Below, in pieces: positions 1,108 through 61,753 of a stretch of DNA of 64,000 nt (its first letter is position 1; the number at the start of each line of letters is the position of its first letter). Both the position numbers and the translations under genes were made by a program. Under the pieces are notes generated by a model. It was not told where the DNA came from and made no database searches. It saw nothing but the letters and a program-made list of their open reading frames with translations. Source of the DNA: Macrostomum lignano (Eukaryota); NCBI GenBank assembly GCA_002269645.1, contig NIVC01001051.1:62001-126000 (forward strand). The letters are read 5' to 3'.

Positions 1108-1803
1108 TAGAGCTCGAACAGGAGCAGAATTTTCGGGATCGGGCGGGATCGGGATTGAAAATAATTTCGGGATCGGGATTCGGGATTAGTATTCGGGATT
1201 CGGGAATCTGGGATCTGGGAATATATTACTTACTAACTAATGAATCAAGGATTCAAGGATAGTTTTATCTGACTATAAACCCATGAGGGGCTTTTCATAT
1301 TGTCAATTCTTGTTCCAGACCCTTTTTGCAAAGTATAGCCTAAAAATTATCAGAATACTTGATGGAATAGTTAATGGAAAAGTTAGCGGAATACTTAACC
1401 GAAAAGTTAATGGAAAAGTTGACGAAAAAGTTGATGGCCAAAGTTATACTCGTCTTTTTTCTTGTAAAATTCTGTTTCTGGAATCGCTTCGTGAAAAGCC
1501 TCATACTTATTAGTTCGTTATTTACAAGTACAACTCTTTACAAATCTGTTACTAAGTAAAAATCTGCTGCTTTATTTGGTGAATTCAAGGTCAGACTTTC
1601 AACATATTTATAGTTGCTGTTACAAAAATTAGCTTAGTATTGATTACTGCTCTTGATTGTTGAAAGCATCATCTTCATTATCAATCTATTGTGCTCCCGA
1701 ATCCCGAGTTCTCTAAGCCTTCGGGATCCCGATCCCGAATTCCCGAAAAATCTTCGGGATCCCAAGAATTCGAGATTGGGATCGGGATCCCGTTCGAGCT
1801 CTA
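1108..1803. mobile_element. Non-autonomous hAT-type DNA transposon (696 bp)
   Basis: TIR TAGAGCTCGAAC / GTTCGAGCTCTA; perfect 8-bp TSD ATTCAAAT (1100-1107, 1804-1811); subterminal CGGGAT/ATCCCG repeats at both ends. Confidence 0.9.
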
Positions 1804-2884: not shown

Positions 2885-3833
2885 TAGTCACTATTAGAGA
2901 CATGTCCCAGGGCTCTTATTTATTCTTTTGCTAGCCTTACTAGCTGCCACCAAGCTGTTACAGGGGTTATTCCTTCTTGTTAATATTGCTGGTTATTATC
3001 TGCCTTTTACTAGTAGCATATGTACTTCTATTGGTAGCGTATATACTCTTACTGGTAGCGTCTGTACTTTTTACTGTACTTTCTGGTCTGAGCTGTCTTT
3101 TAGGCACTGTCTATCCTATTCCTATACTCCTCTAAAGGTATTATTCTCAGTCCTGGGTGTTCCTAGGATCAGGGGGTCACAGTGCACTTCGCTGGGTATT
3201 CTGCCCTGAGGCGGGTTTCTCAGACTCTAAGCCTAGATTTCTCTACCCTGTGGTAGGATTTCTGCCTTTCTAAAGGCGGGTTACTATACTTCTAAGTCTA
3301 GGATTTCTCGTTCTCTGAGAACGGACTAAGTTTCTCCCAATTTGGGGATCCTAATGCTGCTAAATAACTAAGTCAATAAGTATTAATCAAGCTTCAATTT
3401 TAGGATACTAGAACAGTTTTAAGCTTTGAAGCCATGCAACAAGGCGAGTTGCTCTCCTTCAGTTTCAGCTCGTGTATTTATACTCCTCTCTTAGTTCATT
3501 TTAAACAAATAACATTTCATAATATTCATAATATTTACAATACTATGCATTAAAACAAAATTAGTCAAATTTCAAATGTACTACTTTCTAAGAAACAAGC
3601 AATCGCTAAGATAAGGCCTACCTCAGACACAACCGCCGTGTCTATAAGTTTCTACATTATAGACATGGTTGCCATGTCTCTAAGTGTGGTATTTTATTTA
3701 CTAAGCCAAGAATAGCAAGTCCTATGAGCTATACACAAGGTAGGAAAAAATTAAAAAAAATGGCATCAACTTTAACATACATGCCTAATACCCATCCAAC
3801 CCATCTAAACCAGATGGTAAAATGGCTACTAGC

Positions 3834-4128
3834 CATACATGCGCAACGTCCAAAATTCGGTCGGCCGTGCGACTTAGTTTTAACAAAAATGCGACGTAGT
3901 TTTTGGCCAAAAATGCGACTTACATGTAAAAAAACCCAAAGCAAAATTAACGCAACTTTGGGTAAACGGCGGGAGTAACTATGACTGTCTTATCAGGCAA
4001 AAATGCCTCGTCAGCTACTTAGTACTACTACGGGTATTTTTTTGGGTGGGCATTTTTGCGACTTCCTTGGTTGGCTGCCAAATCAGTCGGCCGGATCGGC
4101 CGACTCGGCCGACTGTTGCGCATGTATG
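3834..4128. mobile_element. hAT-type MITE (295 bp) carrying a 28S rDNA fragment
   Basis: 14-bp perfect TIR CATACATGCGCAAC / GTTGCGCATGTATG; perfect 8-bp TSD CTACTAGC (3826-3833, 4129-4136); subterminal GTCGGCCG and AAAAATGCGAC repeats. Confidence 0.9.
3960..4023 (+). pseudogene. Isolated 28S rRNA fragment (helix 69 region; R2 and I-PpoI target site)
   Basis: Ungapped match to the conserved eukaryotic 28S sequence GGGTAAACGGCGGGAGTAACTATGACTCTCTTA-AGGTAGCC-AAATGCCTCGTCATCTAATTAGT (recalled from memory): 32/33 left, 21/23 right, central 8 nt replaced by TCAGGCAA. No other rDNA nearby. Confidence 0.9.
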
Positions 4129-4289
4129 CTACTAGCCAAGGTAAGTTGCAAAATAAAAAATGGGAAACAATTAAGAAAAAAAAGAGGAGAGAAAAAGAAA
4201 AAGAAAAGAAAAGAGGGAAAAAAGAATCTGCAAAAAGATTTTTTTTATTAAAACACCTTAAAGACACAACAAAACTGCTAAACATCAAA

Positions 4290-4640
4290 GAAGTGCAATG
4301 TCAAACATAGAAGAGCCAACATATCGAACATAAAAGAGTTACCATATCAAACATAGAAGAGCCACTATGTCGAACATTAAAGAGCCACAATGTCAAACAT
4401 AAAAGACCCACCATGTCAAACATAAAAGAGTCACCATGTCAAACATAAAAGAGCCACCATTTCGAACATTAAAGAGCCACCATGTCAAACATTAAAGAAC
4501 CACCATGTCAAACATTAAAGAACCACCATGTCGAACATTAAAGAGCCACCATGTCTAACATTAAAGAGCCACCATGTCTAACATTAAAGAGCCACCATGT
4601 CTAACATTAAAGAGCCACCATGTCTAACAGTAAAAAGCCA
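4290..4640. repeat. ~21-22-bp minisatellite (AAAGAGCCACCATGTCNAACATT)
   Basis: Tandem units seen directly; boundaries approximate. Confidence 0.85.
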
Positions 4641-4649
4641 CCATGTCGC

Positions 4650-7608: not shown

Positions 7609-10600
7609 ATGAACAGTGGAGGCAATCCGCGCCTCCCAGCTTCTGGCGGCGCAGGCGGCGGAGCCAACAGCTCCTACCTGCCCTGTCGCTCCGAGTCCGC
7701 CTTCTTAATGGTTGGGCCGAATTTTAAAGTTGGCAAAAAAATTGGTAGCGGAAATTTTGGCGAACTCCGACTGGGCAAGAATCTTTACAATAACGAGCAC
7801 GTGGCTGTGAAGCTGGAGCCGCTGAAGTCGCGGGGGCCTCAGCTGCACCTTGAGTACAGGTTCTATAAGGAGCTCGGCTCCCCCGAAGGCCTGCCGCAGG
7901 TGTTTTACTTTGGCCCGACTCACAAGTACAATGCGCTGGTGCTGGAGCTGCTGGGACCGTCTCTAGAGGATCTGTTCGATACTTGCAGTAGGCGGTTCAC
8001 GCTCAAGACTGTCTGCATGATTGCCATACAGCTGGTGAGGCGCCTGTCCGCTTGTTTAGGAATATGCTGATTGATGATGCAAATAAGACTCTGGTTTTGG
8101 GTTTAGAATCTAAATTGTTTTCACATTTAGAATACGCTGGTTTTAGGTTTAGAACCCGCTGGATTTAGGTTCAGAACCAGCTGGATTTAGTTTCAGAACC
8201 TACTAGATTTAGGTTCAGAACCAGTTGAATTTGAGTTCAGAACCTGCTGGATTAGATTCAGAACCTGCTGGATTTAGGTTCAGAACCCGCTGGATTTAGG
8301 TTCAGAACCTGCTGGATTTAGGTTCAGAACCAGTTGAATTTAGGTTCAGAACCTGCTGGATTTAGGTTCAGAACCAAATGGATTTACAGATAGGTTCAGA
8401 ACCAACTGGATTTAGGTTCAGAACCAACTGGATTTAGGTTCAGAATCAACTGGATTTTGGTTCAGAACCTGCTGGATTTACAGATAGGTTCAGAACCAAC
8501 TGGATTTAGGTTCAGAATCAACTGGATTTTGGTTCAGAACCTGCTGGATTTACAGATAGGTTCAGAACCAACTGGATTTAGGTTCAGAATCAACTGGATT
8601 TAGGTTCAGAATCAACTGGAATTAGGTTCAGAATCAACTAGATTTAGGTTCAGAATCAACTGGATTTTGGTTCAGAACCCGCTGGATTTAGGTTCAGAGC
8701 CAGTTGAATTTAGGTTCAAAACCCGCTGGATTTAGGTTCAGAATCAACTGGATTTAGGTTCAGAAATCAACTGGATTTAGGTTCAGAAATCAACTGGATT
8801 TAGGTTCAGAAATCAACTGGATTTAGGTTCAGAACGAACAGGATCTAGGTTCAGGACCCGCTGGATTTAGGTTCAGGACCCGCTGGATTTAGGTTCAGAA
8901 CCAGCTGGATTTAGGTTCAGAACCAGTTGAATTTAGTTTCAGAACTCGCTGGATTTAGGTTCAGACAGGGACAACTTAGTTGGAACGGCCATAGAACACT
9001 GCTTTCAAACGAGCCCCCAACTTTTTTCACCATGATTTGCCTTGTTTCGCGTCCCGGTAGTTTTAGTTGTCCCTGTGTTCAGAACTAGCTGGATTTAGGT
9101 TCAGAACCCGCTGGATTTAGGTTCAGAACCAGTTTAATTTAGGTTCAGAACCCGCTGGATTTAGGTTCAGAACCTGCTGGATTTAGGTTCAGAGCCAGTT
9201 GAATTTAGGTTCAAAACCCATACCTAATCGAACCCACACGCAGATCAGCCGCATGGAATACGTGCACAGTCGCAGCCTAATCTATCGAGATGTAAAGCCG
9301 GAAAATTTTCTTATCGGCCGACAGTCCACCCGCAAGCAGCACCTTGTTCACATAATCGACTTCGGCCTAGCCAAAGAGTACAGAGATCGCGAGACTGGCC
9401 GGCATATTCCCTATAGGGAGCATAAAAGCCTGACTGGCACGGCCAGGTATATGAGTATTAACACGCATTTAGGCAAAGGTGAGTTGGAGTGCTCGTAATT
9501 GTGCATAACATGTACTTAAGTTATGTATATTGCTCTCAACTTCTGGTCCTAGAGGTTGTGTATTCCTCCCAACTTCTGATCCCAAGTTATGTATTCCTCC
9601 CTACTTCCGGTTCTAAGTTTGTAAGTATTACTCCCTACTTCCGGTTCTGAGTTTGAGAGTATTACCCCCTACTTCTGGTTCTAAGTTTGTGAGTATTACC
9701 CCCTACTTCCGGTTCTAAGTTTGTGAGTATTACTCCCTACTTCTGGTTCTAAGTTTGAGAGTATTACTCCCTACTTCCGGTTCTAAGTTTGAGAGTATTA
9801 CTCCCTACTTCCGGTTCTAAGTTTGAGAGTATTACTCCCTACTTCTGGTTCTAAGTTTGAGAGTATTACTCCCTACTTCCGGTTCTAAGTTTGTGAGTAT
9901 TACTCCCTACTTCCGGTTCTAAGTTTGTGAGTATTACTCCCTACTTCCGGTCCCAAGTTATGAGTATTACTGCCTACTTCCGGTCCCAAGTTATAAGTTT
10001 TCCTCCCCACTTCCGGTCCCAAGTTATGATTATTCCTTCCCGCTTCTGGTCCTAAGTCATGTGTATTCTTTCCATAGTATATTCTGTTTCCCCCCACTTC
10101 CGGTACCAAGTTATGTGTACATTTATCTGCATCCCTTGTTATCGGATTTTGCGTATATGTATGTTATTTACTAATTACTATTATAAAGATTATATAAATT
10201 GCTGAATCTGGCCTGCTAGACTAATGAAATGTCTCTTTTATTTAGATTAGCTAGGCACTTTCTAGGAAACTTTCTTATTTCAAAATTTCATTGTAAACAG
10301 CTAAGTGAAAATTTATTTTAACGGTGCAGTGGCGCACAACTTATTTGCTAGCATAAGTGTGCACTAGTCTAACAATAATTATATGCGAACTTGCAGTATT
10401 CCGTTTAGTGCGTTAGTGCGAATTGTGTGTTGGAAATACGATTTTCACTTGTGGGTTGAAAGACATTCTCAGTGAAGTTTTCAACTATTCTGTTCCAGAA
10501 CAGTCCCGACGAGACGACTTGGAAGCTCTAGGCCACATGTTTATGTACTTCCTGCGCGGCAGCTTGCCCTGGCAGGGCCTCAAAGCCGACAACTTGAAGG

Positions 10601-13600
10601 AGCGCTATCAGAAAATTGGCGACACAAAACGGGCTACACCTGTTGAGGTGCTCTGTGACGGATTTCCAGGTGCGTAGCTGCATCCATTTTCAGCCCCGCA
10701 TCTATCCTTCATTGTCATTGTGTTTTCTTCGCTTCCATTTTTATGTATTACTGATCACTTTACTGGTTCTAAATTGTGCATTCACAACTGCTTCTGGTCC
10801 CAAATAGTTTTTAATCCTCCCCACACCCGGTCCCAAACTGTGTTTCTTCCACACTTCCGGTCCCAGATTGCGCATATTCCTCCACACTTCCGGTCCCAGA
10901 TAGTGTATATTTCTCCTACTTCCGGTTGCAGTGTGCATATTCCTCCACACTTCCGGTCCCAGATAGTGTATATTTCTCCTACTTCCGGTTGCAGTGTGCA
11001 TATTCCTCCATACTTCCGGTCCCAGATTGTGTATATTTCTCCTCACTTCCGGTTGCAGTGTGCATATTCCTCCATACTTCCAATCCAGATTTTGTAACTT
11101 GCTCCACACTTCCAGTCCCAGATCGTGTATATTCCTCCTCACTTCCGGTCCCAGATTGCGTATATTCCTCCTCACTTCCGGTCCAGATTGTGTATATTCC
11201 TCCTCACTTCCGGTCCAGATTGCGTATATTCCTCCTCACTTCCGGTCCAGATTGTGTATACTCCTCCACACTACCGGTCCCAGATCGTGTATATTGCTCC
11301 ACACTTCTGGTCTTAGATCGTGTGTATTGCTCCGCACTTCCGGTCCCAGATTGCGTATATTCCTCCTCACTTCCGGTCCCAAATCGTGTATATTGCTCCA
11401 CACTTCTGGTCTTAGGTCGTGTATACTCCTCCACACTACCGGTCCCAGATTGCGTATATTCCTCCTCACTTCCGGTCCAGATTGTGTATTCCTCCTCACT
11501 TCCGGTCCCAGATTGTGTATATTCCTCCTCACTTCCGGTCCCAGTTTGTGTATTCCTCCTCACTTCCAGTCCAATATTGTGTATACTCCTCAATTCCGGT
11601 CCAGATTGTGTATATTCCTCCTCACTTCCGATTTAAATTGCGTATATTCCTCCTCACTTCCGGTCCAGATTGTGTATATTCCTCCTCACTTCCGGTCCCA
11701 GATTGTGTATTCCTCCTCACTTCCGGTCCCAGATTGTGTATATTCCTCCTCACTTCCGGTCCAGATTGTGTATATTCCTCCTCACTTCCGGTCCCCTCGC
11801 AGAGGAGCTGGCCATGTACCTGCGCTACGCCAGACAATTGGACTTCTTCGAGACTCCTGATTATAATTACGCTCGCGGCCTATTCTTAAAACTGTTGGAG
11901 CAGAGAGGCTGGCAGTGCGATTGGGACTTTGACTGGGTGTCTCGTCAAGATCGAACGGTGAGTTAATTTCGTCTAGCGTCTTTAGGCTGTAGCGCCTTTG
12001 CGTCGTGTGTTGTTCAATTTGGCATTAAGAATAGAAATTAGTTTAAATTAGCGCTAACAGATACAAACAGAAGCGTAGAAAAACAAAATAATCGCATTTT
12101 AAAAAATGATTTAATTCGCAGGGCACGCCTGTCAGCGTTGCCAACGCAACTGGGGAGCGAAACAAGCCGGCCGCCGCGCACCTGCAGCCCAAGGTGAGAG
12201 GATTAGCATTATCCGTCCTATTTAATTGTTATCGCTATTTATTAGGTAATATCAGCTTCTTGTCTTCTTTATTAATCCTTCTATTGCCATGTACCATTTA
12301 TTTTTTTATTTTTTTGCACCGAAATTATCAGCCTAATAACTAATTGCATGTTCAAGTTTTCTACTAACTATACTACTTATCAAAGTTGCTTATAAATAAG
12401 TAGTAAATAATACTATTGTTGTGGTTGTTTTTTCAAATATTTATTGCTTGACACTGACGCAGGCCGATCGGGATGCGGGCCAGAATGCCTCTGTTCAGGT
12501 AGTTAAATTGATCTTTCAGTCCGAGTGCTTGCTATCGGATTTAAATACGCCTTATTAAATTTAAATTGGCGCCAGAAACAGGCGTTCACAGGCCGCACCT
12601 GCTTTGTATTTTGTTATTGCTCAAGAATATGCTATCGTGTGTGCGTGATTTTGCACCCTCCACCTAATTTGCAGATGTTTAGTTAGTGCTAAGTATTACT
12701 GATTATATATTAATACACGCATGTGTACTTCATAGGGCTACAGTTTCCAGTAAAGTAGCATAGAGACTGTGCATTTACATTTGTGTACCACTTCATGTTC
12801 GTTTGTGGCTGTTGTTCCTGTTCCCCCGTTGCCATAGCAACTATAGGATATTAAAGACTTGTTTAATATCCCTATCTATGGAGAAGATGCTCATAGGACT
12901 TTCTGCTGTATCCTGACTCCTGACACCCCATGGGATTCTGCTTTATCCTGACTTCTGACACCCCATGGGATTCTGCTGTATCCTGACTGCTGACACCCCA
13001 TGGGATCTGTGCTGTATCCTGACTCCTGACACCCCATGGGATTCTGCTTTATCCTGACTTCTGACACCCCATGGGATTCTGCTGTATCCTGACTGCTGAC
13101 ACCCCATGGGATTCTGCTGTATCCTGACTCCTGACACCCCATGGGATTCTGCTTTATCCTGACTTCTGACACCCCATGGGATTCTGCTGTATCCTGACTG
13201 CTGACACCCCATGGGATTTGTGCTGTATCCTGACTCCTGACACCCCATGGGATTCTGCTGTATCCTGACTCCTGACACCCCATGGGATTCTGCTGTATCC
13301 TGACTCCTGACACCCCATGGGATTCTGCTGTATCCTGACTTCTGACACCCCATGGGATTCTGCTGTATCCTGACTGCTGACACCCCATGGGATTCTGCTG
13401 TATCCTGACTCCTGACACCCCATGGGATTCTGCTGTATCCTGACTTCTGACACCCCATGGGATTCTGCTGTATCCTGACTGCTGACACCCCATGGGATTC
13501 TGCTGTATCCTGACTCCTGACACCCCATGGGATTCTGCTGTATCCTGACTCCTGACACCCCATGGGATCTGTGCTGTATCCTGACTCCTGACACCCCATG

Positions 13601-16600
13601 GGATTCTGCTGTATCCTGACTCCTGACACCCCATGGGATTCTGCTGTATCCTGACTCCTGACACCCCATGGGATTCTGCTTTATCCTGACTCCTGACACC
13701 CCATGGGATCTGTGCTGTATCCTGACTGCTGACACCCCATGGGATCTGTGCTGTATCCTGACTCCTGACACCCCATGGGATTCTGCTTTATCCTGACTCC
13801 TGACACCCCATGGGATCTGTGCTGTATCCTGACTCCTGACACCCCATGTGATTCTGCTTTATCCTGACTCCTGACACCCCATGGGATTCTGCTTTATCCT
13901 GACTCCTGACACCCCATGACGTTGACACCCTATAAAGTGTTATTTTATTTTGCGTCACTGTATGTTTTGAAGAACTGCTAATAGTTCGAATGAAAAGTGC
14001 AAAGCAAGTCTTCCACTGCGGCCTCTCATTCACCCCTGCATCCAACCCCCTGTCTGCTTGGTAATTTGAATTAGCCGGCAGCCAATCAACGGCAGTTTAG
14101 CTATCAGCCGATGCAGCAGAACAGCAACGGTCAGTCAGCTTATCAACATCAGCAGCAGCAGCAACAGCACCGGCCGAGAACCAGTGTCAGTCAATTGGTA
14201 AAATTTTAATCTGACATTAGTCTGGCAAACAGACAGAAGTCTACAGGATGTATGCAGCGTGTAATATTATTAACTGTGACCTCTTGGTCTCTGCCCACCC
14301 TCTTTTTGTCTATTTCTTGCGTGCATCTGCTTTAACAAACTTCTGCAACTGCAGCCATGGCTTTGGTCTGTCTAATCTCAGTGTGGTCACTTTCCGCTCT
14401 TGATTAACAAGACAAGACTTAAAGATAGGGGGTCTGTGTACAGACATTGTCACACAACCGGCGAGAGGCATTACTGCCCATTCCACCGACTCCCCTGAGC
14501 AGGCACACACAGTCACACAGGAGTGTACAGCGGACCTAATTTTATTTATCGTTAGTAATAATAATAAAAATAATTGATTACACCTGCCCCAATTGGGCCA
14601 GATGTGCAACCGACAGCTCAGCCGCAGCTATTGCGCGGCGCATCAGAAGGCTGCGTACGGCTGTTCAGTCCAAGGACTGGGGGGTCGCCACACACACCCT
14701 GAACTATCCCAGCTAATGCTGGCACCCATTTTACAGCTGGGTGAACTGCAGCAATTCAGAGTTAAGTGTCTTGCTCAAGGACACAAATTGTTCCGAGTGG
14801 AATCGGGCATCGAACCCACGACCTTCAAGTCGTGAGTCGGACGCTCTGACCACTAGGCTACATCCCTTTATTGTTAGGCATGCACACTTGTGCCTTAGGG
14901 GTTGGTCCTCAAGGACGTAACGAGCAGAGCCAAGCCGTAATTCCAATTAAGCCCCAAATTAATGCGACTGCACTGGGAATCGAGCCTGGGCCGGTGGCAC
15001 ACCAGAGCGCCGCGCCAGACCGCTGAGCAACGGCCCCCATCTAACATCTTTCTGCTTGCAGTTTGTTTTTTTAATTAACTTCGGTGCAGAAATACTAATG
15101 CGTATCAGCTGGTGGCAAATTGAAAGCGCAAAAAAATAATTTTATCTATCTGTTTTGTGCACATCTTCGCACTATATGCTTGTCAGAATATTGATTAACT
15201 CATTTCTGGTGATTGGTGATGGTTCAATCATTTTTTGTCCATTATCTTGTCAGTGATTCGTGATTTTGCCCTATGTTCATTATTATTCATCCGTGTTGGC
15301 GTAATCTAACTCTCTATCTAGATACCTGACTCTTTGTCTGAATATCTGACTCTTTGTCTGCATATCTGACTCTCTGTCTGCATGTCTGACTCTGTGTCTG
15401 GATATCTGACTCTTTGTCTGCATATCTGACTCTCTTTGTCTGCATGTCTGACTCTGTGTCTGGATATCTGACTTTCTATCTAAATATCTGACTCTGTCTG
15501 CATGTCTGACCCTCTTTGTCTGCATGTCTGACCCTCTTTGTCTGGATATCTGACTCTTTGTCTGGATATCTGACTCTTTGTCTGCATATCTGACTCTTTG
15601 TCTGAATATCTGACTCTTTGTCTGCATATCTGACTCTCTTTGTCTGCATGTCTGACTCTCTGTCTGCATGTCTGACTCTTTGTCTGAATATCTGACTCTT
15701 TGTCTGCATATCTGACTCTCTGTCTGCATGTCTGACTCTGTGTCTGGATATCTGACTCTTTGTCTGAATATCTGACTCTTTGTCTGCATATCTGACTCTC
15801 TGTCTGCATGTCTGACTCTGTGTCTGGATATCTGACTCTTTGTCTGAATATCTGACTCTTTGTCTGCATGTCTGACTCTTTGTCTGAATATCTGACTCTT
15901 TGTCTGCATATCTGACTCTCTTTGTCTGAATATCTGACTCTTTGTCTGAATATCTGACTCTTTGTCTGAATATCTGACTCTTTGTCTGAATATCTGACTC
16001 TTTGTCTGAATATCTGACTCTCTTTGTCTGAATATCTGACTCTTTGTCTGCATATCTGACTCTCTGTCTGCATGTCTGACTCTGTGTCTGGATATCTGAC
16101 TCTATCTGCATGTCTGACCCTCTTTGTCTGGATATCTGACTCTTTGTCTGGATATCTGACTCTTTGTCTGGATATCTGACTCTTTGTCTGGATATCTGAC
16201 TCTTTGTCTGGATATCTGACTCTCTGATTCTTTGTCTGGATACCTGACTGACTCTTTGTCTGCATGTCTGGCTGTCTAACTCTGAGATGTCTGATTCTCT
16301 TTCTGGGTGTCTGACTTTCTGTATCTGTTGTTGGAAAGCTCGAATTTTTAGCCAAAAAAATTTGAATTGCTTTGGAATTTTTCTATTATTTTTAAGATGT
16401 CCGATCAAAACTCCATCAGTTCCATAATTTAATTTAGCTTGCCTGATTAATCTCGCCCTGTATAAAACTCGCCATATTTCATATCGCTATTTTGACCCGG
16501 CATGTCATCATCATCATCACTGCCCTCAGGTTGCCGCTTCGATGACCTTCGATCAGCAGCCGTCCGACGGTGGCGCAGGCGGGCCATCAGTGCCAGGCGG

Positions 16601-20330: not shown

Positions 20331-40396
<20,066 letters not shown>

Positions 40397-43054: not shown

Positions 43055-46000
43055 TTATTGGCCGCAGAGGCGCCTGCGCGAATGCCGACCATCTGGCGAA
43101 CGGCATCGAGGAGAGGCGCCGCCGCAGTCAATGGGCGCCGCCACCGTCGTCGGATCGACAACGACGGAATTGGCGGCGGCGCTGAACTTTCGAACCAGCG
43201 CCGACTTCTTGGCGCTCTCCGGCATGGCCTGCACAGCGGCGTAGAGCTGCGCCACCTGCAGCTGCGTGTAGTCGCGCCCGCCCAGCCGGCTGGCGGTCGA
43301 GCGGTCAACGAAATTCATGCACACGTCGACTGCTTCGTCGTTATCGTCATCGCTATCGGCGTCGGCGTCAAGGACTTCGTCGGCTTCGCGGCTGCAGCTG
43401 CGACTGCGGCTGTAGCACCGACTGCGCTCGGTCGAGAGACTGCGCATGGCGTCGATGACCAGGTGCTCGGGGACCTGGTTGGTGGGGTGGTCAGGTTAGT
43501 TAGTCTAATCAAGACGACAGGTGGGGTGGTCAGGTTAGTTAGTCTAATCAAGACGACAGGTGGGGTGGTCAGGTTAGTTAGTCTAATCAAGACGACAGGT
43601 GGGGTGGTCAGGTTAGTTAGTCTAATCAAGACGACAGGTGGGGTGGTCAGGTTAGTTAGTCTAATCAAGACGACAGGTGGGGTGGTCAGGTTAGTTAGTC
43701 TAATCAAGACGACAGGTGGGGTGGTCAGGTTAGTTAGTCTAATCAAGACGACAGATGGGGTGGTCAGGTTAGTTAGTCTAATCAAGACGACAGGTGGGGT
43801 GGTCAGGTTAGTTAGTCTAATCAAGACGACAGGTGGGGTGGTCAGGTTAGTTAGTCTAATCAAGACGACAGGTGGGGTGGTCAGGTTAGTTAGTCTAATC
43901 AAGACGACAGGTGGGGTGGTCAGGTTAGTTAGTCTAATCAAGGCGACAGGTGGGGTGGTCAGGTTAGTTAGTCTAATCAAGGCGACAGGTGGGGTGGTCA
44001 GGTTAGTTAGTCTAATCAAGGCGACAGGTGGGGTGGTCAGGTTAGTTAGTCTAATCAAGGCGACAGGTGGGGTGGTCAGGTTAGTTAGTCTAATCAAGAC
44101 GACAGGTGGGGTGGTCAGGTTAGTTAGTCTAATCAAGGCGACAGGTGGGGTGGTCAGGTTAGTTAGTCTAATCAAGGCGACAGGCACATGCTCACACATG
44201 GTGTACAGCGGCACCTTGTTGACTCTGACACGAGTCAAAACGAATCATAATGTATTTTTCTAGCTATACTACTTAGTAGGTAGTATCTCAATCTTATCAA
44301 ATCAAAAAAAAATTAAATTCTTCACACCTTGAATAATTCACCAGCGTGGCGAATCATGTAGGTCACGGCTCTGTTGGACAGGGCAATGATTCTGGCATAG
44401 TCGTCTGTGCTCTTCATCTGAAATCGGAATCGAATATTAAATGCTCTTTATTTATTAATGAACTTATCTACATGCCCAATCAAGAGATTGAGATCCCAGT
44501 TCTCTAATAGATTGAGATCCCAGCTCACTAATAGATTGAGATCCCAGTTCTTTAATAGATTGAGATCCCAGTTCTCTAATAGATTGAGATCCCAGTTCCC
44601 AAGAAGGCTGAGATCCCAGTTCTCGAGAAGGCTGAGATCCCAGTTCTCGAGAAGGCTGAGATCCCAGTTTCGAAGAAGGCTTGAGATCCCAGTTCTCAAG
44701 AAGGCTTGAGATCCCAGTTCTCAAGAAGGCTTGAGATCCCAGTTCTCAAGAAGGCTTGAGATCCCAGTTCTCAAGAAGGCTTGAGATCCCAGTTCTCAAG
44801 AAGGCTTGAGATCCCAGTTCTCAAGAAGGCTTGAGATCCCAGTTCTCAAGAAGGCTTGAGATCCCAGTTCTCAAGAAGGCTTGAGATCCCAGTTCTCAAG
44901 AAGGCTTGAGATCCCAGTTCTCAAGAAGGCTTGAGATCCCAGTTCTCAAGAAGGCTTGTGATCCCAGTTCCCAAGAAAGCCTGAGATCCCAGTTCTCAAG
45001 AAGGCTTGTGATCCCAGTTCCCAAGAAAGCCTGAGATCCCAGTTCCGAAGAAGGCTTGAGATCCCAGTTCTCAAGAAGGCTTGAGATCCCATTTCTCAAG
45101 AAGGCTTGAGATCCTAGTTCTCAAGAAGGCTTGAGATCCCATTTCTCAAGAAGGCTTGAGTTCCCAGTCCAGCAACAGACCTGTCTCGGGCAGAGCAGCA
45201 GGGGTCCGAACACGGTGCCCAGATTCTCAGGCGTCATTAGTGTCCGGGGCAGCTCGGCCACCTGTCCGAGCAGTTTGAGCAGGCTACTCAGCATCCACCT
45301 GTTGGAGTGCGGCAGCAGCTGAACGAGGATTTGAAAACCGCGGAGCTGGCGAGCCGCTGCCAGGCTGACGGAGCCGCCAGGTTTCTCAACCGGGCACAGC
45401 GGATTCCCGTTCTCGTCCAGGCGTTGCGGGTTCAGGTCTGGCGGTGGGCGGGAGCGCGATGGCATGATCTCTTAGTGTGAGTTCAGTGGCGATTCTCAAG
45501 GGCGATTTTCAAGGGCGATTCTTAAGGGCGATTCTCGAGTGAGATTCTCAAGTGAGATTCCTAAGTGAGATTCTTAAGTGAAATTTTTAAGTTAGGTTCT
45601 CAAGTGAGATTCTCAAGTGAGATTCTTTAGAGATTTTCAAGTGGGATTCTTAAGTGAGATTTTCGAGTGAGAGATTCTCAAGTGAGATTCTCAAGTGAGA
45701 TTGAGAGTAAGTGAGATTCTCTAGTGAGATTCTCCAAGGAAAGCATGAGTCAGAAGCGATTTCAATAGAGATTTTCTTAGAATTGAGTATGAAAAAACGT
45801 TCCATGAGCAAGCATCTCGGCAGTTCGTATAGAATTTTAATTAACAAGCTATAAAGTTACGAATAGTCGGTCTCTTTGTTACTCTGAAAAATTCAGTCAA
45901 TCAATCTTGTTGCTAAGCTTAGAATCATTTTTATTCAATAACGGCAATTCTGTGTGAAACATAAAATTTTGTTGTTTAAGCTGAAATTCCAACAAGAATT

Positions 46001-49000
46001 GATAATAGGAAAGAGACTCGCTTCGCTTGTTCAACGGAAGCCCCTGGCATTGAATGGAAATGGAATGGCTACTGGAGTTTTATCCCCCGAAAAACAAAGA
46101 CGCGTCAAGAGGCGAGGGAAGGGATACCCACGAATAAGCCAGTTCGCCCTGCGGCACGTTTTGGGGATCGCAAAGAATTGATGAAGATAACTATGATGGG
46201 ATGAGGTGGGGCTTCCTCGTCCTTCACTTCCCCTTCCAGTCTCGCGTCATGGGGAACGCGGGACAGAATGGGATGGGAGTCGGGGTGCACTGTTGCGCAA
46301 CAGGCTGGACAAAAACGGCCCCTCAATTTGCGTCACAGTGGGTGGCGCAGGCACTTAAAAACAGTGCCAGCCAGCGCAATACTGAGGGAAGCGAAGCCGG
46401 CCTAGCGAGGGCCCTGGAGGTGGGCAAAGCTCCCAAAAAGGATGCAGCGGAGTTTAAACAATTTCCTATTCGCTTCACAGGTGACAGCATTTCAGCACTC
46501 TGCTGGGCTTCCAAGTCGATGAGTATAAAGTATAGGAAAATGGGAAATGCCAGCTTAAGTGCTCTGTTTAGCACCTGTCGTAAGCTGAATACTTTACGAG
46601 TAGTTGTGACACAGGTGAAATTATTTGCGGAATACCGATTCGATTATTGAAAATATTGCAAAACGGAATAACTTTTTTTACCAGAAGAATTACAGATTAA
46701 AGACTAAGCTACAGACTTGATTACAGACTAAGCTACAGGCTAGATTACAGACTAAGCTACAGACTTGATTACAGACTAAGCTACAGGCTAGATTACAGAC
46801 TAAGCTACAGACTAGATTACAGACTAAGCTACAGGCTACATTACAGACTAAGCTACAGACTAGATTACAGACTATGCTACAGACTATATTACATACTAAG
46901 CTACAGGCTAGATTATAGACTAAGCTACAGACTAGATTACAGACTAAGCTACAGGCTACATTACAGACTAAGCTACAGAATGGATTACAGACTAAGTTAC
47001 AGGCTAGATTACAGACTAAGCTACAGAATAGATTACAGACTAAGTTACAGACTAGATTACAGACTAAGCTACAGAATAGATTACAGACTAAGCTACAGGC
47101 TACATTACAGACTAAGCTACAGACTACATTACAGACAACTGCAGGCACTCACCGGCCACCTGCAGGAAGTACGGCCCCAGTCGGTCAGTGAGCAGCGGCT
47201 GCTTCAAGTCGTCCAGGCAAGCCTTCAGCACTCCGGCGATGTCGTGCACGCAGCAGCCCAGCTCCGACACGACCGCCTCGGCGACAGACTGACTGGCCGG
47301 CAAGTCCTGCTGCGCGGCCGGGAACAGACGGCGACGAAGCTGGCGCTGACGGCTGACCTGGCCGGACTTGCGGAAGATGCCCTCCGCGTCGAGGCGACTC
47401 TCCAGCAGGTGGATGAGCCGCTGAACTCCCGTCAGGATGTCTGCATTCAAGAAGTCGTCGTTTTGGGCAGCAGCGGCGGCATCTGCAGAGACGGCAGAGA
47501 CGTGCGGTTGACCTGCGGCGGATCGGATGTCCATTTTGAGTTCGAAAACTTATATGAGCATAGCTTTAGTCGCAGTTCCCCATGTAGCCGTGCATACATT
47601 TCGAAAGGTCATTGTTGGGTCACCTGTGCTTAAATCCACCTGGTCCTCCTCCACTGCCCTGCTCCGCCCTGTTCACCAAGTCGCCGCAAGATCGTAAAAA
47701 TGTTCAAACTCGGAAATTTTCAAAACAAAGACTATTTTACGACCTAGACTCTATGCAAGAGCTTCAAACTTAATTACTAAATAGAAGCTTTGTCCCGAGT
47801 TGTAAATATTCGGTCCAGCGAGTTTGATGAGGCGTTGATGGAGTTTGATCTCTTTCTGGGTGAGTGGAGAAGCGCCAGAAGCAACAGGCCAGCAGATGGC
47901 CTCCAGCGCCTGGAGCAGGTCAGGCTCTGCTATGCAGCCCTTGGGGGTCTGGAATCTCGCTTGATTAATGAATAGGTGGACGGCAGGGGCAGTCAGCTGA
48001 AAATCCTTATTCACAAACTGGACAACAAAGACCCACTGACAGATATAGGAAGCGAAAGTGTTAAGAATGGAACGTTAAGAGGTTGCAGACACGATATCGG
48101 CATTCTTTCTGTTGCTCATTTCCTCTTGAAGAAACTTGGGTCATCTTTTTCTCTTGGGGAGTGGAAAAACACCTGACAGAATCTCCATTCTCCATCACTT
48201 CCATTTGTGGCCCGGTTCTTTGTCACCTTGATTTCCAAAACTCCGCATGGGGGACAAAGACTTGAATCTTAAATACTTGAGGACAAAGACATGGCACTAC
48301 AGGCTCGTAGTAATATATGCACCGGACCGGAGGTGGGTTCACAGACCCTTCCCAGGAGAGTAGGAAACCATGGCTTCCTACTAAATTGGATTTATAGTTA
48401 TTGTCCATAATTTAGTTGAAGACTACTAAGGGTTCTCAAGCCAATCCCAAGACCAGACCCCGATGGGCCCCACAAAACACTTGAGTGTTTTATTGGGTTC
48501 GCATCACATGGGCTGAGGCCTGAGGCGTCTATATTAGTTTGGCAATGGTCCAGGGCTCCATATTTACTGCCTATAGGCAGGGGTGGAAATTGAGCTCTTT
48601 CCTTTGCTTTTGCTTCTTCTAGGGGACTGGGGAGTAAGATTTATCAAGATGGGCATTGGGCCAAAGTTTAAATTGACAACAAAATAGTGCTCCAAATTCG
48701 AGTTGAGTGAGTTGATGGCCAGGCTGTGTAGGAATAAAACTCAGGCCTATACTCAATCATAATTGCGGCACCCCTTGACTACAGAAAACTCTGTGTATTT
48801 TAGATGACCATCTGTGCGCACCGCATGGGAAAGTGGCTGGTTGTATAAAGTCACTCCAGCCTAAATTTTCGATTCCATTAGAGACCATTGCGCAATGATT
48901 TGTTTTATTAGCAATAGACGAGTCTTCAGTTGCGAGGGCGATGCGATGAGATTAGTGCAGACATATATGCGATCGAGCCGGTAGCATTTCCATATATGAT

Positions 49001-58241: not shown

Positions 58242-59185
58242 TAGGGATTCCAAAATCCCGACATTTTACAATCCCGGGATTGAATAGTCCCGAAATCCCG
58301 ATGCTGTTGAAATCCCGGGATTCAAAATCCCGGAATCCCGGTGCTTTTGCAATCCCGGGATTAAAAATCCCGGGATTCGATTCCCAAAAAAATCCCGGGA
58401 TTCAAATCCCGGATTTTTGGCCCCAATCCCGGGATCCCGGGATCCCGGGATTGGAATCCCTAAATTGCTAGACGGACTGTGCGGCGTGCCGCGTGCAGTA
58501 GTCATGGTCTCACGACTCTCAGAGTCTCAGGGCCTTTTCATATTACCAATTCCAGAACCAGAATCGGTTCGGAATTCCAAGAAAAAACAGCAGTATAACT
58601 ATTAAACTCTGTTAATATTTGACTGCCTTAACAGCCTCACTTAGCACAATTTTTCACTTTCTTCTTGGCGACTGTCATTCAATAATAAAAACTTTATAGC
58701 ACGTATCTCCCTCTAGTTATGGAGACAAAAAGTTTATACTTCACAAATTGGTTCTTGTTCTGGAACCAGAGCAAGCAATATGAAAAGGCCCTCAGTCTCG
58801 TCTCGTGGTAGAAGACGAAAAAAAACAGTTAAAATTATCTATAATTTACAGTTCACATTAACAATTTTTAGCTCAATTAGGACAGGAGCTTTGCAAATGT
58901 TTAACGTTTCATTGAGAAACAGCAAAAACAAATAAATGTTTTATTATTCAAATAAACGTTTAGACTTTAAATTATCTAATTTAGGCATTGAAAGGTCGTT
59001 CTAATCCCGAACCAATCCCGGGATTAAGGCCTTGAAATCCCGGGATCCCGATCCCGGTCTTTTGCAATCCCGGGATTAAAAATCCCGGGATTCGATTCCC
59101 AAAAAAATCCCGGGATTCAAATCCCGGATTTTTGGCCCCAATCCCGGGATCCCGGGATCCCGGGATCCCGGGATTGGAATCACTA
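58242..59185. mobile_element. Composite non-autonomous hAT-type element (944 bp)
   Basis: Ends TAGGGATTCCAA and TTGGAATCACTA; perfect 8-bp TSD TCCATACT (58234-58241, 59186-59193); empty site visible at 61951-61958; ATCCCGGGAT subterminal arrays; an extra internal right end at 58451-58462. Confidence 0.88.
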
Positions 59186-59248
59186 TCCATACTCCATATC
59201 TCCCTCCTCCCTCCCTCTCCCTCTCCCTATCTCCCTTCTCCCTTCCTC

Positions 59249-61336
59249 GGCGGAGTCTCTGGCGTCCGCGACTTTGGCGAGCGTCTGGCCGTGTCGGCGG
59301 CTCGCGGCTTCAAGCGCGAACTGATGGTGGACGACGGTCCGCCGCTTCCCCGCCGCCCAACGGCCAGCATCGATCCGAGCCGCCTCCGGCCCGAAATTCA
59401 AGCCGCTCTGGCGGAGCTAGACGACGTCAGGGAGAACATCCGGGACTGCAGGAACGCTCCTAACATCAGCCAGGCGGAGGCAAAGGCACTGCGAGATCTG
59501 CGGGCAGACAAGTCCATCGTCATCAAGCCAGCCGACAAGGGCAGCCAGCTGGTCATCCTGGACCGGCAGGACTATGTCCGTGAATGCCTGCGTCAGCTGG
59601 AAGACCCGCTGTTTTACCGACCTCTGAGCGCACCGATCAGCCGCTTCACAGCCCAGATGATCCGCGGCGTCTTCAGATCGCTGCTGGACCGAAGGATCAT
59701 CGATCGGCGCCAGTTCAACGCCTTCTGCCCGAAGGAGGAGTTCCGCACGCGGTGCTTCTACATCCTGCCGAAGATCCACAAGCCCGTCGAGTCGTGGCCG
59801 CTCGGCGACATTCCTCCGGGCCGGCCCATCGTGTCTGATGTGGACATGCGAGTCTTACGCCAGCGGCCGCTTCATCGACAGCTTCCTGCAGCCGATCGTC
59901 ATCCAGCTGCCCAGCTTCATCAGGGACACTGACCACTTCCAGGCCGCCATCCGCGGGATCGCCTGTGAGGAGTCCTTCCTGTTCACCATGGACGTCGCCA
60001 GCCTTTACACCAACATCCCGACCGCGGCCGGACTCGAGTGCGTACGGAGGGCCTTCAGGGATCACCCGGATGCCAGGCGCCCAGACGCGAGCCTCCTCAG
60101 TCTGCTCAAGCTTAACCTGGAGCGCAACGACTTTGAGTTCGACGGCAAATTTTTCCTGCAAGTGAAAGGCACGGCCATGGGGAAGTCGTTTGCACCCAGC
60201 TACAGCAACATCTACATGGGCTACTGGGAGCAGCGGGGCCTGGAGCTCAGCCCGCAGAAGCCCGCCCTGTGGCTGCGCTACATCGACGACATCTTCGGCG
60301 TCTGGCACGGAACGAGAGACGAGCTGGTCCGCTTCCACGAGCTCCTGGATGGCCTCGACCCGAACATCAGGTTGCAGCTGAGCTACAGCAGCACCGAGGT
60401 CAACTTCCTGGACACCACCGTCTTCTGGGACCGCGAGGGGGTCTCCAAGCGTCTGGCGACTAGAGTCTTCTTCAAGCCCACGGACAGCCGAGCTCTTATC
60501 CACCGCGACTCATTTCATCCGAGGTGGACGTTCAAGGGTGTGGTCAAGTCCCAGCTCATCAGATACGCCCGCAGGTGCTCGACTTCGACGCGGCCTGCAC
60601 CGAGCTGCTGTCGAATCTGGTGCAGCACCAGGGCTACAACAGGCGTTTTCTACGCAATATCAAATACGAGGTGCTGGCGGAGCTGGGTATCTACCCGACA
60701 AGGCGGTGGGAGTTCGGCTTCCTGCCGTGCAACCCGGCCCGGCTGTGCAAGTGCTGCCAGGCGCACGCCAGATTCACCTCCGTCTGCCCGGGATCCGCGT
60801 CCACGACCGTCAAGATCACCATCAGCCAGAGGATCGACTGCAACTCGGTCAACGCCGTCTACACGGTGTTCTGCCGCCGCTGCAGCTGCACGGTCTACGT
60901 CGGCGAGACGGTCAACAGCATCCGGGCCCGCATGCTAGCGCACGTCGGCGACATCAGGCACGCACGCGACACTCCGGTGGCCCGCCACTTCAGCAACGAT
61001 GGCCATAGTCTCGAGGACTTTGCCTTCACCGGAGTGTGGACGCGAGACGGCTTTGGACCCAAGGCCAATGAACGACGTCAACGCCAGGAGGCCAAACTCA
61101 TCGCGGTCCTGAAAACTCTGGTCCCACATGGCGCCAACGAGCTGGCCGGGGTGCTGCACAATCCGGCGATCCCACTGATTGTGCCGCACTGCGCTGGGTC
61201 AGACACCCTGGTTGCCAAGGTGAGGGACGGCGTGGCACAGCACTGCGATGCCCCTGTACTGCCGGCCTTCACTAAAGGGAGGAGCCTTCGGGATCTACTC
61301 TGCCACAGCCAGCTCGAACCAGCTTCTGCCAATTGA
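59249..61336 (+). pseudogene. Penelope RT-endonuclease ORF broken by two frameshifts
   Basis: One ORF split over three frames: a +1 base near 59846 (VSDVD/CESY) and a shift near 60580 (RRCS/DFDAAC); stop at 61336. Confidence 0.85.
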
Positions 61337-61753
61337 GATCAGCTGTAGAAAGGCTCTTTTACTGCTATTTTTCCCCTCTGTGATTTTTTCATTGACTTTT
61401 TTTTTATTTATTCAGATTATTTATTTCTGCTTTTTATTCATTTTTCTGACACTGTGTACGGTGCACCTGCATTTTTTGCTCTGAGCATTTAATAATAATT
61501 TTTATTTACCTTACCTATTTATTTTGCCATTTATTTTTACAATTTTTATTCTACACTTAAAGGTCGTCCAGGCCCACTTGTACAGTTTTAGCCACCCCCC
61601 GCTTTTCTCATAGTCTCGGACTCGTTTTAATGTACTGACCATGCGTACTGTTTTAAGTACTTGAGCACATCAATTTATCGATCGTCTCTCCCTGACGATA
61701 TCGCCTTTATATATTGACGGCAATTCGCGCCAAATAAACTTCACTCGCTTACA

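What the first reader, a model, noticed from the sequence alone, without database searches (positions are those of the whole stretch)
3826..4136. hAT MITE carrying the 28S rDNA R2/I-PpoI target site, scrambled exactly at the cut position
Seen: a 295-bp element with perfect 14-bp TIRs and an 8-bp TSD has near its centre (3960-4023) a 64-nt ungapped copy of 28S rRNA. The flanks match at 32/33 and 21/23, but the central 8 nt (AGGTAGCC) are wholly replaced by TCAGGCAA. Established: this segment includes helix 69, R2 retrotransposons insert at TTAAGG^TAGC, and I-PpoI cuts CTCTCTTAA^GGTAGC. Inference: a DNA transposon captured the rDNA site targeted by site-specific endonucleases. The mutation pattern looks like a cleavage-and-repair scar that left the protein-binding flanks intact. 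Such a family could be a mobile decoy or landing pad for R2, or a source of rRNA-like small RNAs. I do not know of a described hAT MITE with this cargo.
Basis: partly seen in the sequence, partly recalled or inferred. Interest (0 to 1): 0.88.

Follow-up and report, generated by a model that had tools for sequence, protein, structure and literature searches.

The report
Small transposon carrying a 28S fragment
A 295-bp non-coding "cut-and-paste" transposon in an unidentified animal genome carries a 64-base piece of the large ribosomal RNA gene in its middle, most likely picked up by accident during DNA repair; nothing here shows that it acts as a decoy or landing site for rDNA-specific elements.

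Summary
Window 3834-4128 is a 295-bp element with perfect 14-bp terminal inverted repeats and a perfect 8-bp target-site duplication. No such structure appears in 30 shuffles. Bases 3960-4023 match eukaryotic 28S rRNA (E about 1e-15), spanning -36 to +28 around the R2 insertion site. The flanks match 32/33 and 21/23, and eight consecutive bases differ.

- "Wholly replaced" depends on the alignment. Three indels (+TC, -TAGC, +AA) give the same sequence.
- The octamer's 3' half turns 28S GCCAAATGCC into the element's own signature motif CAAAAATGC. All four copies of that motif in the window lie inside the element. The change also creates an 11-bp perfect hairpin partner for 4049-4059 (P about 0.006 for a random octamer).
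- Under the published R2Bm rules the upstream recognition motif is intact, but the cleavage motif is inactivated. The I-PpoI site matches 7/15.

The hAT assignment is only partly met: the TIR starts CATAC, not YARNG. I could not reach any other copy or the source genome.

Best reading: passive filler-DNA capture followed by a templated complex mutation. The nuclease-scar, decoy and landing-pad ideas remain untested. Moderate curiosity value.

The parts
3826..3833 (.). Left target-site duplication, CTACTAGC
   Evidence: Identical to 4129-4136 (D8).
3834..3847 (+). Left terminal inverted repeat, CATACATGCGCAAC
   Evidence: 100% complementary to 4115-4128 (I2). There are no other copies in the window.
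3848..3959 (+). Left arm with subterminal repeats: GTCGGCCG at 3860-3867; TGCGAC at 3868, 3890 and 3914; CAAAAATGCGAC at 3884-3895 and 3908-3919
   Evidence: (D2, D3, D10).
3960..3992 (+). 28S-derived segment, positions -36 to -4 relative to the R2 insertion site (32/33 match). It contains an intact R2Bm-type upstream motif (RUM) at 3962-3974 and helix 69 at 3971-3989.
   Evidence: RUM definition from PMC10499050.
3993..4000 (+). Divergent octamer TCAGGCAA in place of 28S AGGTAGCC (positions -3 to +5). Its last 3-4 bases plus the following AAATGC(C) form the element's motif CAAAAATGC.
4001..4023 (+). 28S-derived segment, positions +6 to +28 (21/23 match). Homology may run to 4025 with one gap.
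3997..4007 (+). GCAAAAATGCC, the left arm of a perfect 11-bp inverted repeat that overlaps the octamer
   Evidence: Reverse complement of 4049-4059 (I9). Random octamers give a repeat of 11 nt or more in 0.64% of trials. The two arms pair in the RNA fold.
4049..4059 (-). GGCATTTTTGC, the right-arm copy of the signature motif in inverted orientation and hairpin partner of 3997-4007
4026..4114 (+). Right arm: TGCGAC at 4057-4062 and a palindromic cluster of GTCGGCCG/CGGCCGAC repeats at 4084-4115
   Evidence: (I3, I18, I24, I25).
4115..4128 (-). Right terminal inverted repeat
   Evidence: I2.
4129..4136 (.). Right target-site duplication, CTACTAGC

Best explanation
This is a recently inserted copy of a small non-autonomous DNA transposon. 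It has TIRs and an 8-bp TSD and is hAT-like, but the superfamily is not proven.

Its middle holds about 64 nt copied from the host 28S rRNA gene. The most likely origin is passive filler DNA. When the parent element was shortened by interrupted gap repair, the repair polymerase switched template to the abundant, open rDNA and back. The two transposon arms were left flanking a 28S piece (inferred).

The eight-base divergent block is most likely one complex, templated mutation rather than a nuclease scar. A short template switch, or conversion against the element's own repeated motif, changed 28S ...GCCAAATGCC into ...GCAAAAATGCC. That made a fourth copy of the element's signature 9-mer and a perfect 11-bp hairpin with the right arm.

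On this reading the coincidence with the R2/I-PpoI cut position is incidental, and the fragment has no function. The element moves, if at all, through its TIRs and subterminal repeats using a transposase supplied in trans.
For: Shown:
- Perfect TIR and TSD, far beyond chance.
- No open reading frame in any of the six frames.
- Strong single-strand hairpin, z = -6.5.
- Repeated subterminal motifs in opposite orientation on the two arms.
- The 28S piece is collinear, central and highly significant. It is the only rRNA-like stretch in the element and in the 64-kb window.
- All four CAAAAATGC 9-mers in the window lie inside the element, and one is built from octamer bases plus 28S bases. None of 100 shuffles reaches four copies.
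- The octamer creates an 11-nt perfect inverted repeat with 4049-4059. With the intact 28S sequence the longest repeat is 7 nt. Only 0.64% of random octamers do as well.
- Net length change is zero, as expected for an in-place templated mutation rather than two independently joined pieces.

From the literature:
- Non-autonomous hAT elements commonly carry filler DNA, occasionally captured from genes (PMC3260210).
- Short template switches create clustered multinucleotide changes that perfect hairpins (PMC5453318 and PMC8794818).
- rDNA-derived modules in TEs are known and mostly thought to be neutral reshuffling (PMC10946416).
Against: - Only one copy is available, so the order of events and the ancestral state are inferred.
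- The templated model explains only the 3' half of the octamer (GCAA, or GGCAA with a 1-nt gap against 3904-3915). TCAG at 3993-3996 has no donor within the element.
- The changed block (-3 to +5) lies inside the stretch that R2Bm melts (-6 to +5). In the indel-only alignment the 4-nt deletion starts exactly at the R2 nick. For a random event that placement is roughly a 1-in-5 coincidence within the fragment.
- The fragment containing the R2 site at all is a further coincidence of a few percent. Ascertainment softens this, because this is the most recognisable stretch of 28S.
- Microhomology at the capture junctions cannot be assessed without the parent element.
Confidence: 0.55

Rival explanations
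1. Nuclease scar. The 28S site was cut by an R2-type endonuclease or an I-PpoI-like homing enzyme, either in the donor rDNA unit before capture or in the transposon after capture. Error-prone end joining then left the small +TC / -TAGC / +AA lesion.
For: - The changed block is -3 to +5 around the R2 insertion point.
- An indel-only alignment places a 4-nt deletion immediately 3' of AAGG, the R2 bottom-strand nick (site definition in PMC10499050).
- The upstream motif needed to recruit R2Bm (3962-3974) is fully intact.
- Polymerase-theta-type joining can insert short copies of nearby sequence. That would also account for the CAAAAATGC-like bases.
Against: - There is one copy and one lesion, so no recurrence can be shown.
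- No R2 element or R2 fragment was seen in the window. The only reverse-transcriptase element is Penelope-like.
- The alignment that puts the deletion at the nick is one of several equally good ones.
- Exact conservation of length is not expected from end joining.
Confidence: 0.15
2. RNA-mediated capture. A piece of mature 28S rRNA was reverse-transcribed by a Penelope-like or LINE enzyme and used as filler. The scramble reflects stalling, slippage or template jumping at the modified nucleotides next to this site.
For: - From my own knowledge, not tested here: the conserved m5C (yeast C2278, human C3782) is position +5. Two 2'-O-methyl-adenosines (yeast A2280 and A2281) are +7 and +8. These sit at the 3' edge of the changed block and in the A-run that appears expanded from AAA to AAAAA.
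- A reverse-transcriptase element is present in the window.
Against: - No poly(A) or other retro-insertion hallmark is present.
- 2'-O-methyls usually cause pauses rather than rewriting of 8 nt.
- The model does not by itself explain the match to the element's own motif.
Confidence: 0.1
3. Two separate template switches. The left (33-nt) and right (23-nt) 28S pieces were copied independently from the two repair ends and joined through the element's own GGC(C)AAAAATGC motif, using the microhomology CAAA..TGC shared with 28S.
For: - GGCCAAAAATGC at 3904-3915 resembles GGCAAAAATGC at 3996-4006 (D3).
- 28S CCAAATGC and the motif CAAAAATGC share microhomology.
Against: - The two pieces are collinear, in the same orientation and at exactly the 28S spacing with zero net length change. 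That would be a coincidence under independent capture.
Confidence: 0.1
4. Functional cargo. The family spreads R2 recognition sites through the genome. These would act as a non-cleavable sink (decoy) for R2 protein, as ectopic landing pads for R2, or as a source of rRNA-like small RNAs.
For: - The piece (-36 to +28) just covers the R2Bm upstream recognition motif (-34 to -22), which is intact.
- The nicking motif is inactivated (A-3 to T, T+1 to G). That is the pattern a bind-but-do-not-cut decoy would need.
Against: - There is no evidence of copy number, conservation, R2 presence, binding or expression.
- Landing-pad function is contradicted by the destroyed cleavage motif and by the absence of an R2 insertion here.
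- The three further substitutions in the flanks (3987, 4014, 4018) suggest neutral decay.
- Review opinion is that most rDNA modules in TEs are neutral.
Confidence: 0.05

Closest known systems
Ds2 / Ds-like non-autonomous hAT elements of maize carrying filler DNA (PMC3260210)
   Same: - Short TIRs, an 8-bp TSD and subterminal short repeats on both arms.
- An internal segment unrelated to the transposase, copied from elsewhere in the genome and occasionally from genes.
   Different: - Here the filler is only about 64 nt and comes from the 28S rRNA gene.
- The terminus is CATAC rather than C/TAGGG.
- The autonomous partner is unknown, and the host is an animal.
Pokey and its MITEs mPok (piggyBac) of Daphnia (PMC4912750; PMC10946416 Table 2)
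   Same: - DNA transposons and MITEs that carry rDNA-derived sequence.
- They are tied to this same stretch of 28S: Pokey inserts at the TTAA of CTCTCTTAAGGTAGCC.
   Different: - Pokey's cargo is IGS/ITS repeats, not the 28S target itself.
- Its TSD is TTAA and it actually resides in rDNA.
- The present element has an 8-bp TSD and sits in ordinary intergenic DNA, about 3.5 kb upstream of a kinase exon.
R2 families with 28S-like sequence in their 3' UTR (Kojima, Seto, Fujiwara 2016, PMC5035012)
   Same: - A mobile element carries a diverged copy of the 28S sequence around the R2 site.
   Different: - Those are R2 retrotransposons inserted in 28S, and the 28S-like part lies at the element's end.
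- Here a TIR element carries both sides of the site internally.
SINE28 (28S-derived SINE of mammals; cited in PMC5786205 and PMC10946416)
   Same: - A non-autonomous element with a 28S-derived module.
   Different: - It is a retroposon.
- From my own knowledge, it derives from a different part of 28S (the 3' end).
- It has no TIR or TSD of the cut-and-paste type.
Short template-switch mutations / quasipalindrome correction (PMC5453318, PMC8794818)
   Same: - A tight cluster of changes that turns an imperfect inverted repeat into a perfect one (7 bp to 11 bp here).
   Different: - Only half of the cluster is explained by the nearby arm.

Membership tests
MITE / non-autonomous TIR transposon | Terminal inverted repeats | tested here: met
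   14/14 complementary, 3834-3847 against 4115-4128.
MITE / non-autonomous TIR transposon | Target-site duplication directly flanking the TIRs | tested here: met
   CTACTAGC on both sides. No TIR+TSD structures appear in 30 shuffles.
MITE / non-autonomous TIR transposon | Small size and no coding capacity | tested here: met
   295 bp with stop codons in all six frames.
MITE / non-autonomous TIR transposon | Multiple dispersed copies in the genome | not testable with these tools
   There is a single copy in the 64-kb window. The source genome could not be reached. Protein-frame, metagenome, viral and prokaryote-genome scans gave only chance hits.
hAT superfamily | 8-bp target-site duplication | tested here: met
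   Symmetric ends are obtained only with an 8-bp TSD.
hAT superfamily | Terminal 5'-YARNG signature (from my own knowledge of Ac, hobo, Hermes, Tol2 and Charlie ends) | tested here: not met
   The terminus reads CATAC. The neighbouring element at 1108-1803 reads TAGAG and does fit.
hAT superfamily | Target consensus nTnnnnAn | tested here: inconclusive
   CTACTAGC has T at position 2 but G at position 7.
hAT superfamily | Short subterminal repeats on both arms | tested here: met
   CAAAAATGC(GAC), TGCGAC and GTCGGCCG motifs.
hAT superfamily | Autonomous partner with the same ends encoding a hAT transposase | not testable with these tools
From my own knowledge, P, Merlin and some Mutator-like elements also make 8-bp TSDs.
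R2 target site (R2Bm rules, PMC10499050) | Upstream motif A(-31)WWWGCNNNA(-22) within -34..-22 | tested here: met
   3962-3974 GTAAACGGCGGGA is identical to 28S.
R2 target site (R2Bm rules, PMC10499050) | Insertion-site motif T(-6)TNANNT(+1) | tested here: not met
   It reads TTATCA|G. A(-3) is T and T(+1) is G. In R2Bm, changing T(+1) abolishes cleavage and changing A(-3) severely reduces it. In the +2 register the spacing rule is violated.
I-PpoI recognition site | CTCTCTTAAGGTAGC | tested here: not met
   7 of 15 bases match at 3985-3999.
Eukaryotic LSU rRNA (Rfam RF02543) | Score at or above the gathering threshold | tested here: not met
   11.8 bits against a threshold of 50. It is a fragment, not a gene. 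The sequence-level match is significant.
Filler DNA from abortive gap repair | Foreign segment lies between two transposon arms and has an identifiable donor elsewhere | tested here: met
   The 28S piece is central, with a 126-bp left arm and a 103-105-bp right arm.
Filler DNA from abortive gap repair | Microhomology at the junctions relative to the parent element | not testable with these tools
   The parent element is unknown.
Short template-switch mutation | The mutated cluster becomes the reverse complement of a nearby segment | tested here: inconclusive
   GCAA extends a 7-bp inverted repeat to 11 bp (P 0.006). TCAG is not explained.

The most novel reading that the evidence does not exclude
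A cut-and-paste transposon family spreads copies of the R2 recognition region of 28S rDNA (upstream motif intact, nick site disabled) around an animal genome. The copies would act as bind-but-do-not-cut sinks for R2 protein. Alternatively, copies with an intact site would act as extra-ribosomal landing pads that let R2 escape the rDNA. The lesion seen here would then be the footprint of R2 endonuclease action.
Probability: 0.06. Interest if true: 0.75.

Novelty: new member of a known kind. Interest (0 to 1): 0.33.

Why it matters
If it is only filler, it is a clean, datable example of a DNA transposon capturing a piece of rDNA. It also shows a clustered mutation that is best read as templated.

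That makes it useful as a caution. A lesion sitting on a famous nuclease site is not by itself evidence of cutting.

It would matter more if genome-wide copies showed recurrent lesions or R2 insertions at the site. That would reveal traffic between an rDNA-specific retrotransposon and a DNA transposon, and a route by which R2 targets leave the rDNA.

Tried and rejected
Searches for other copies:
- Translating the open frame across the element and searching 5.8 billion proteins found nothing.
- An exhaustive HMMER search of 1.84 billion representatives gave only two hits, and both matched the 28S part alone.
- A metagenome scan for TIR plus GTCGGCCG gave 9 hits. All were chance matches in high-GC bacterial contigs.
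- Viral-contig and prokaryote-genome scans with the TIR, the junction, the 28S-variant and the subterminal-repeat patterns gave nothing or unrelated bacterial hits.
- A full-text search of papers for the TIR string gave only unrelated primers.

Species identification:
- The best relatives of the Penelope-like reverse transcriptase are only 60-62% identical.
- The best relatives of the casein-kinase exon are 83-86% identical, from metagenome and Logan contigs.
- The source is therefore an unidentified metazoan, and its own 28S could not be compared.

Rejected ideas:
- Chance resemblance to 28S: E about 1e-15.
- A bacterial or organellar LSU origin: the flanks carry the eukaryote-specific AAATGCCTCGTCA.
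- A hAT excision footprint: this would retain about 16 nt of duplicated target, not 8.
- An R2 3' junction: this would keep TAGCC intact from +1.
- A 9-11-bp TSD (Mutator-like): this gives asymmetric ends.
- Relatedness of P0241 beyond the 28S peptide: no alignment.

Full report
**What is there**

Window 3826-4136 holds a textbook small TIR transposon.
- An 8-bp direct repeat, CTACTAGC (3826-3833 and 4129-4136), flanks a 295-bp element.
- The element's ends, CATACATGCGCAAC (3834-3847) and its exact reverse complement (4115-4128), form a perfect 14-bp inverted repeat.
- Only an 8-bp TSD gives symmetric ends.
- A scan of the window for perfect 12-bp TIRs bracketed by 8-bp duplications recovers this element. 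The same scan finds nothing in 30 block-shuffled windows.
- All six frames contain stops.
- The single strand folds far better than shuffles (-61.7 kcal/mol, z = -6.5).
- Both arms carry short repeats: TGCGAC four times, GTCGGCCG/CGGCCGAC five times, and CAAAAATGC.
- CAAAAATGC lies twice on the left arm in forward orientation (3884, 3908) and once on the right arm in inverted orientation (4050). This is the arrangement expected of transposase-binding subterminal repeats.
- All four occurrences of this 9-mer in the 64-kb window are inside the element. None of 100 shuffles reaches four.

**The 28S piece**

- A blastn of the conserved H69-H71 stretch of eukaryotic 28S against the window hits only 3960-4023 (E 6.8e-16).
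- I checked the reference in three ways:
  - against a public rDNA array that Rfam confirms as LSU/SSU/5.8S (L029);
  - against a 28S primer printed in the Pokey paper (reverse complement GGTAGCCAAATGCCTCGTCA);
  - against the R2Bm target described in PMC10499050.
- The element aligns to L029 at 3106-3169 with E 2e-13.
- Rfam's permissive scan of 3700-4300 returns LSU_rRNA_eukarya as its only hit. No other rRNA-like fragment exists in the window.
- In the ungapped alignment the mismatches are at 3987, 3993-4000, 4014 and 4018.
- A run of eight among eleven mismatches never arose in 200,000 permutations.

**Where the description needs correcting**

- "Wholly replaced" is a property of the ungapped alignment.
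  - Infernal aligns CUUA[uc]AGGcA[--]aAAAUGCC and keeps AGG.
  - Three indels alone (+TC after TTA, -TAGC after AAGG, +AA in the A-run) regenerate the observed 18-mer exactly.
- The octamer is not arbitrary sequence.
  - Its last bases, together with the 28S-derived AAATGCC that follow, read GCAAAAATGCC (3997-4007).
  - That is the perfect reverse complement of 4049-4059 on the right arm, and it contains the element's signature 9-mer.
  - With the intact 28S sequence, the longest repeat touching this spot would be 7 nt.
  - Random octamers of the element's composition give 11 nt or more in 0.64% of 5,000 trials.
  - The two arms pair in the predicted fold of 3950-4070.

**Relation to R2 and I-PpoI**

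Using the numbering of Wilkinson et al. (PMC10499050), the fragment covers -36 to +28.
- The 13-bp upstream motif that recruits R2Bm (-34 to -22, consensus A-31 WWWGCNNNA-22) is intact at 3962-3974.
- The insertion-site motif T-6 TNANNT+1 reads TTATCA|G. Both A(-3) and T(+1) are changed. In R2Bm, changing T(+1) abolishes nicking and changing A(-3) severely reduces it.
- The alternative +2 register breaks the spacing rule.
- The I-PpoI 15-mer matches 7/15.
- The changed block (-3 to +5) lies within the region that R2Bm melts (-6 to +5).
- An R2Bm-like protein might therefore bind this DNA but should not cut it, and the copy is not interrupted by R2.
- These rules come from one silkworm enzyme. 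Whether the source species has R2 at all is unknown.

**Superfamily**

- The 8-bp TSD, short TIRs and subterminal repeats fit hAT.
- The terminus CATAC does not fit the YARNG signature of characterised hAT ends. This signature is from my own knowledge.
- The TSD fits nTnnnnAn on one side only.
- A second 8-bp-TSD element 2 kb upstream (1108-1803) does show canonical hAT features: TIR TAGAGCTCGAAC, TSD ATTCAAAT and TCGGGAT subterminal repeats.
- hAT-type activity therefore exists in this genome, and the contrast is visible.
- I file the 28S-bearing element as "hAT-like, not proven". P-type or other 8-bp-TSD superfamilies remain possible.

**Search for relatives**

None could be reached.
- The open frame across the element found nothing in the word-indexed protein collection.
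- An exhaustive HMMER search found only two proteins, both matching the 28S-encoded peptide alone.
  - One (P0242) led to the rDNA array L029.
  - The other (P0241) is a protein-level assembly from a soil metagenome.
- DNA-pattern scans of metagenome, viral and prokaryotic-genome collections gave only chance hits in bacteria.
- The source organism is a metazoan I could not identify.
  - It has a casein-kinase-I-gamma-type exon, RhoGAP exons and a Penelope-like retroelement.
  - The best relatives are 60-86% identical.

**Most likely mechanism**

- Non-autonomous hAT-type elements arise by interrupted repair of the excision gap, and they often carry filler DNA copied from elsewhere, occasionally from genes (PMC3260210).
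- A central 64-nt stretch of 28S between two arms that keep their binding-site repeats is what that process produces. rDNA is an abundant and accessible template.
- The zero net length change argues that one contiguous piece was captured and later altered in place. It argues against two pieces joined independently.
- The alteration extends a 7-bp inverted repeat to 11 bp and recreates the element's own motif. This is the signature of a short template switch or quasipalindrome correction (PMC5453318 and PMC8794818), or of short-patch conversion from a sister motif.
- This explains GCAA (or GGCAA). It does not explain TCAG at 3993-3996.
- I put about 0.55 on the whole chain. I put about 0.8 on "passive captured cargo" and about 0.5 on "templated mutation rather than nuclease scar".

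**Rival explanations**

- A nuclease-and-repair scar (0.15) is favoured by the position of the lesion. It is weakened by the lack of recurrence, the lack of any R2 in view, and the ambiguity of the alignment.
- Capture through reverse-transcribed rRNA, with stalling at modified nucleotides (0.10), rests on my recollection that the conserved m5C and two 2'-O-methyl-adenosines sit at +5, +7 and +8. It is untested.
- Two independent template switches (0.10) are disfavoured by the preserved spacing.
- A functional decoy or landing pad (0.05) has no direct support. The landing-pad version is contradicted in this copy by the disabled nick motif.

**How surprising is the coincidence**

- Given a 64-nt fragment, an 8-nt cluster overlapping the cut region has a chance of roughly one in five.
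- That a captured 28S piece includes this site at all has a chance of a few percent.
- This stretch is also the part of 28S a reader is most likely to recognise, so ascertainment inflates the apparent coincidence.
- The coincidence is worth a genome-wide check. It is not evidence on its own.

**Novelty**

- A 2024 review's table of rDNA-derived modules in TEs lists Pokey/mPok (IGS repeats), 5S-derived SINEs, SINE28 and Cassandra/Ajax. It lists no TIR element with a 28S core fragment.
- R2 families that carry 28S-like sequence in their own 3' UTR are known.
- The element is therefore a new instance of a known kind, namely a non-autonomous DNA transposon with captured host or rDNA sequence.
- It is of moderate interest until copies are examined.

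Noticed in passing
window 1108-1803: A second non-autonomous element with canonical hAT features. It has the TIR TAGAGCTCGAAC (12 bp perfect, 25 nt at 88%), the 8-bp TSD ATTCAAAT (fits nTnnnnAn) and many TCGGGAT subterminal repeats. It carries no rRNA-like cargo.
   Followed up: partly
window 59100-61340 (+), with flanking repeats at 58363-58410 and 59078-59125: A frameshifted Penelope-like retroelement (reverse transcriptase plus a GIY-YIG-type C-terminal part) read across three frame segments. The best database relatives are only 60-62% identical. It is bracketed by AAAAATCCCGGGATTCAAATCCCAA repeats and palindromic TCCCGGGA runs.
   Followed up: partly
window 7609-8040 (+); 47124-47534 and 45121-45465 (-): Host gene pieces. 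One is a long single exon of a casein-kinase-I-gamma-type kinase (83-86% identical to the best hits). The other two are exons of a RhoGAP-domain gene. The transposon lies about 3.5 kb upstream of the kinase exon.
   Followed up: partly
window, throughout (e.g. 30387-32897, 33634-35815, 12901-13918, 43481-44184): A very high density of micro- and minisatellites. These include (ATCT)n of 2.5 kb, (AGAC)n of 2.2 kb, and dozens of 10-48-bp-period arrays with 10-60 copies each. A 23-bp array starts only about 150 bp downstream of the transposon (4280-4647).
   Followed up: no
window 3625-3689 and 2027-2091: A hairpin-forming repeat of about 65 bp (about 86% identical between the two sites; arms AGACACNNCCNCCGTGTCT / AGACATNGNTGCCATGTCT). 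One copy lies immediately upstream of the transposon. It is possibly another small mobile or foldback repeat.
   Followed up: partly
L029 9784-9957 (public metagenome contig, Rfam-verified rDNA array): One of three 28S copies in this array carries a 96-bp tandem duplication running from about -76 to +20 around the R2/I-PpoI site, so the site is present twice. It could be a real rDNA variant or a long-read assembly artefact.
   Followed up: partly
P0241 (soil-metagenome protein assembly, SRR6267154): A predicted protein containing two copies of the peptide encoded by 28S -40..+20, separated by 25 unrelated residues. It has Ala to Cys at the codon covering +3..+5. The non-28S part is not similar to the transposon arms. 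It may be a 28S-fragment tandem repeat or an assembly chimera.
   Followed up: partly
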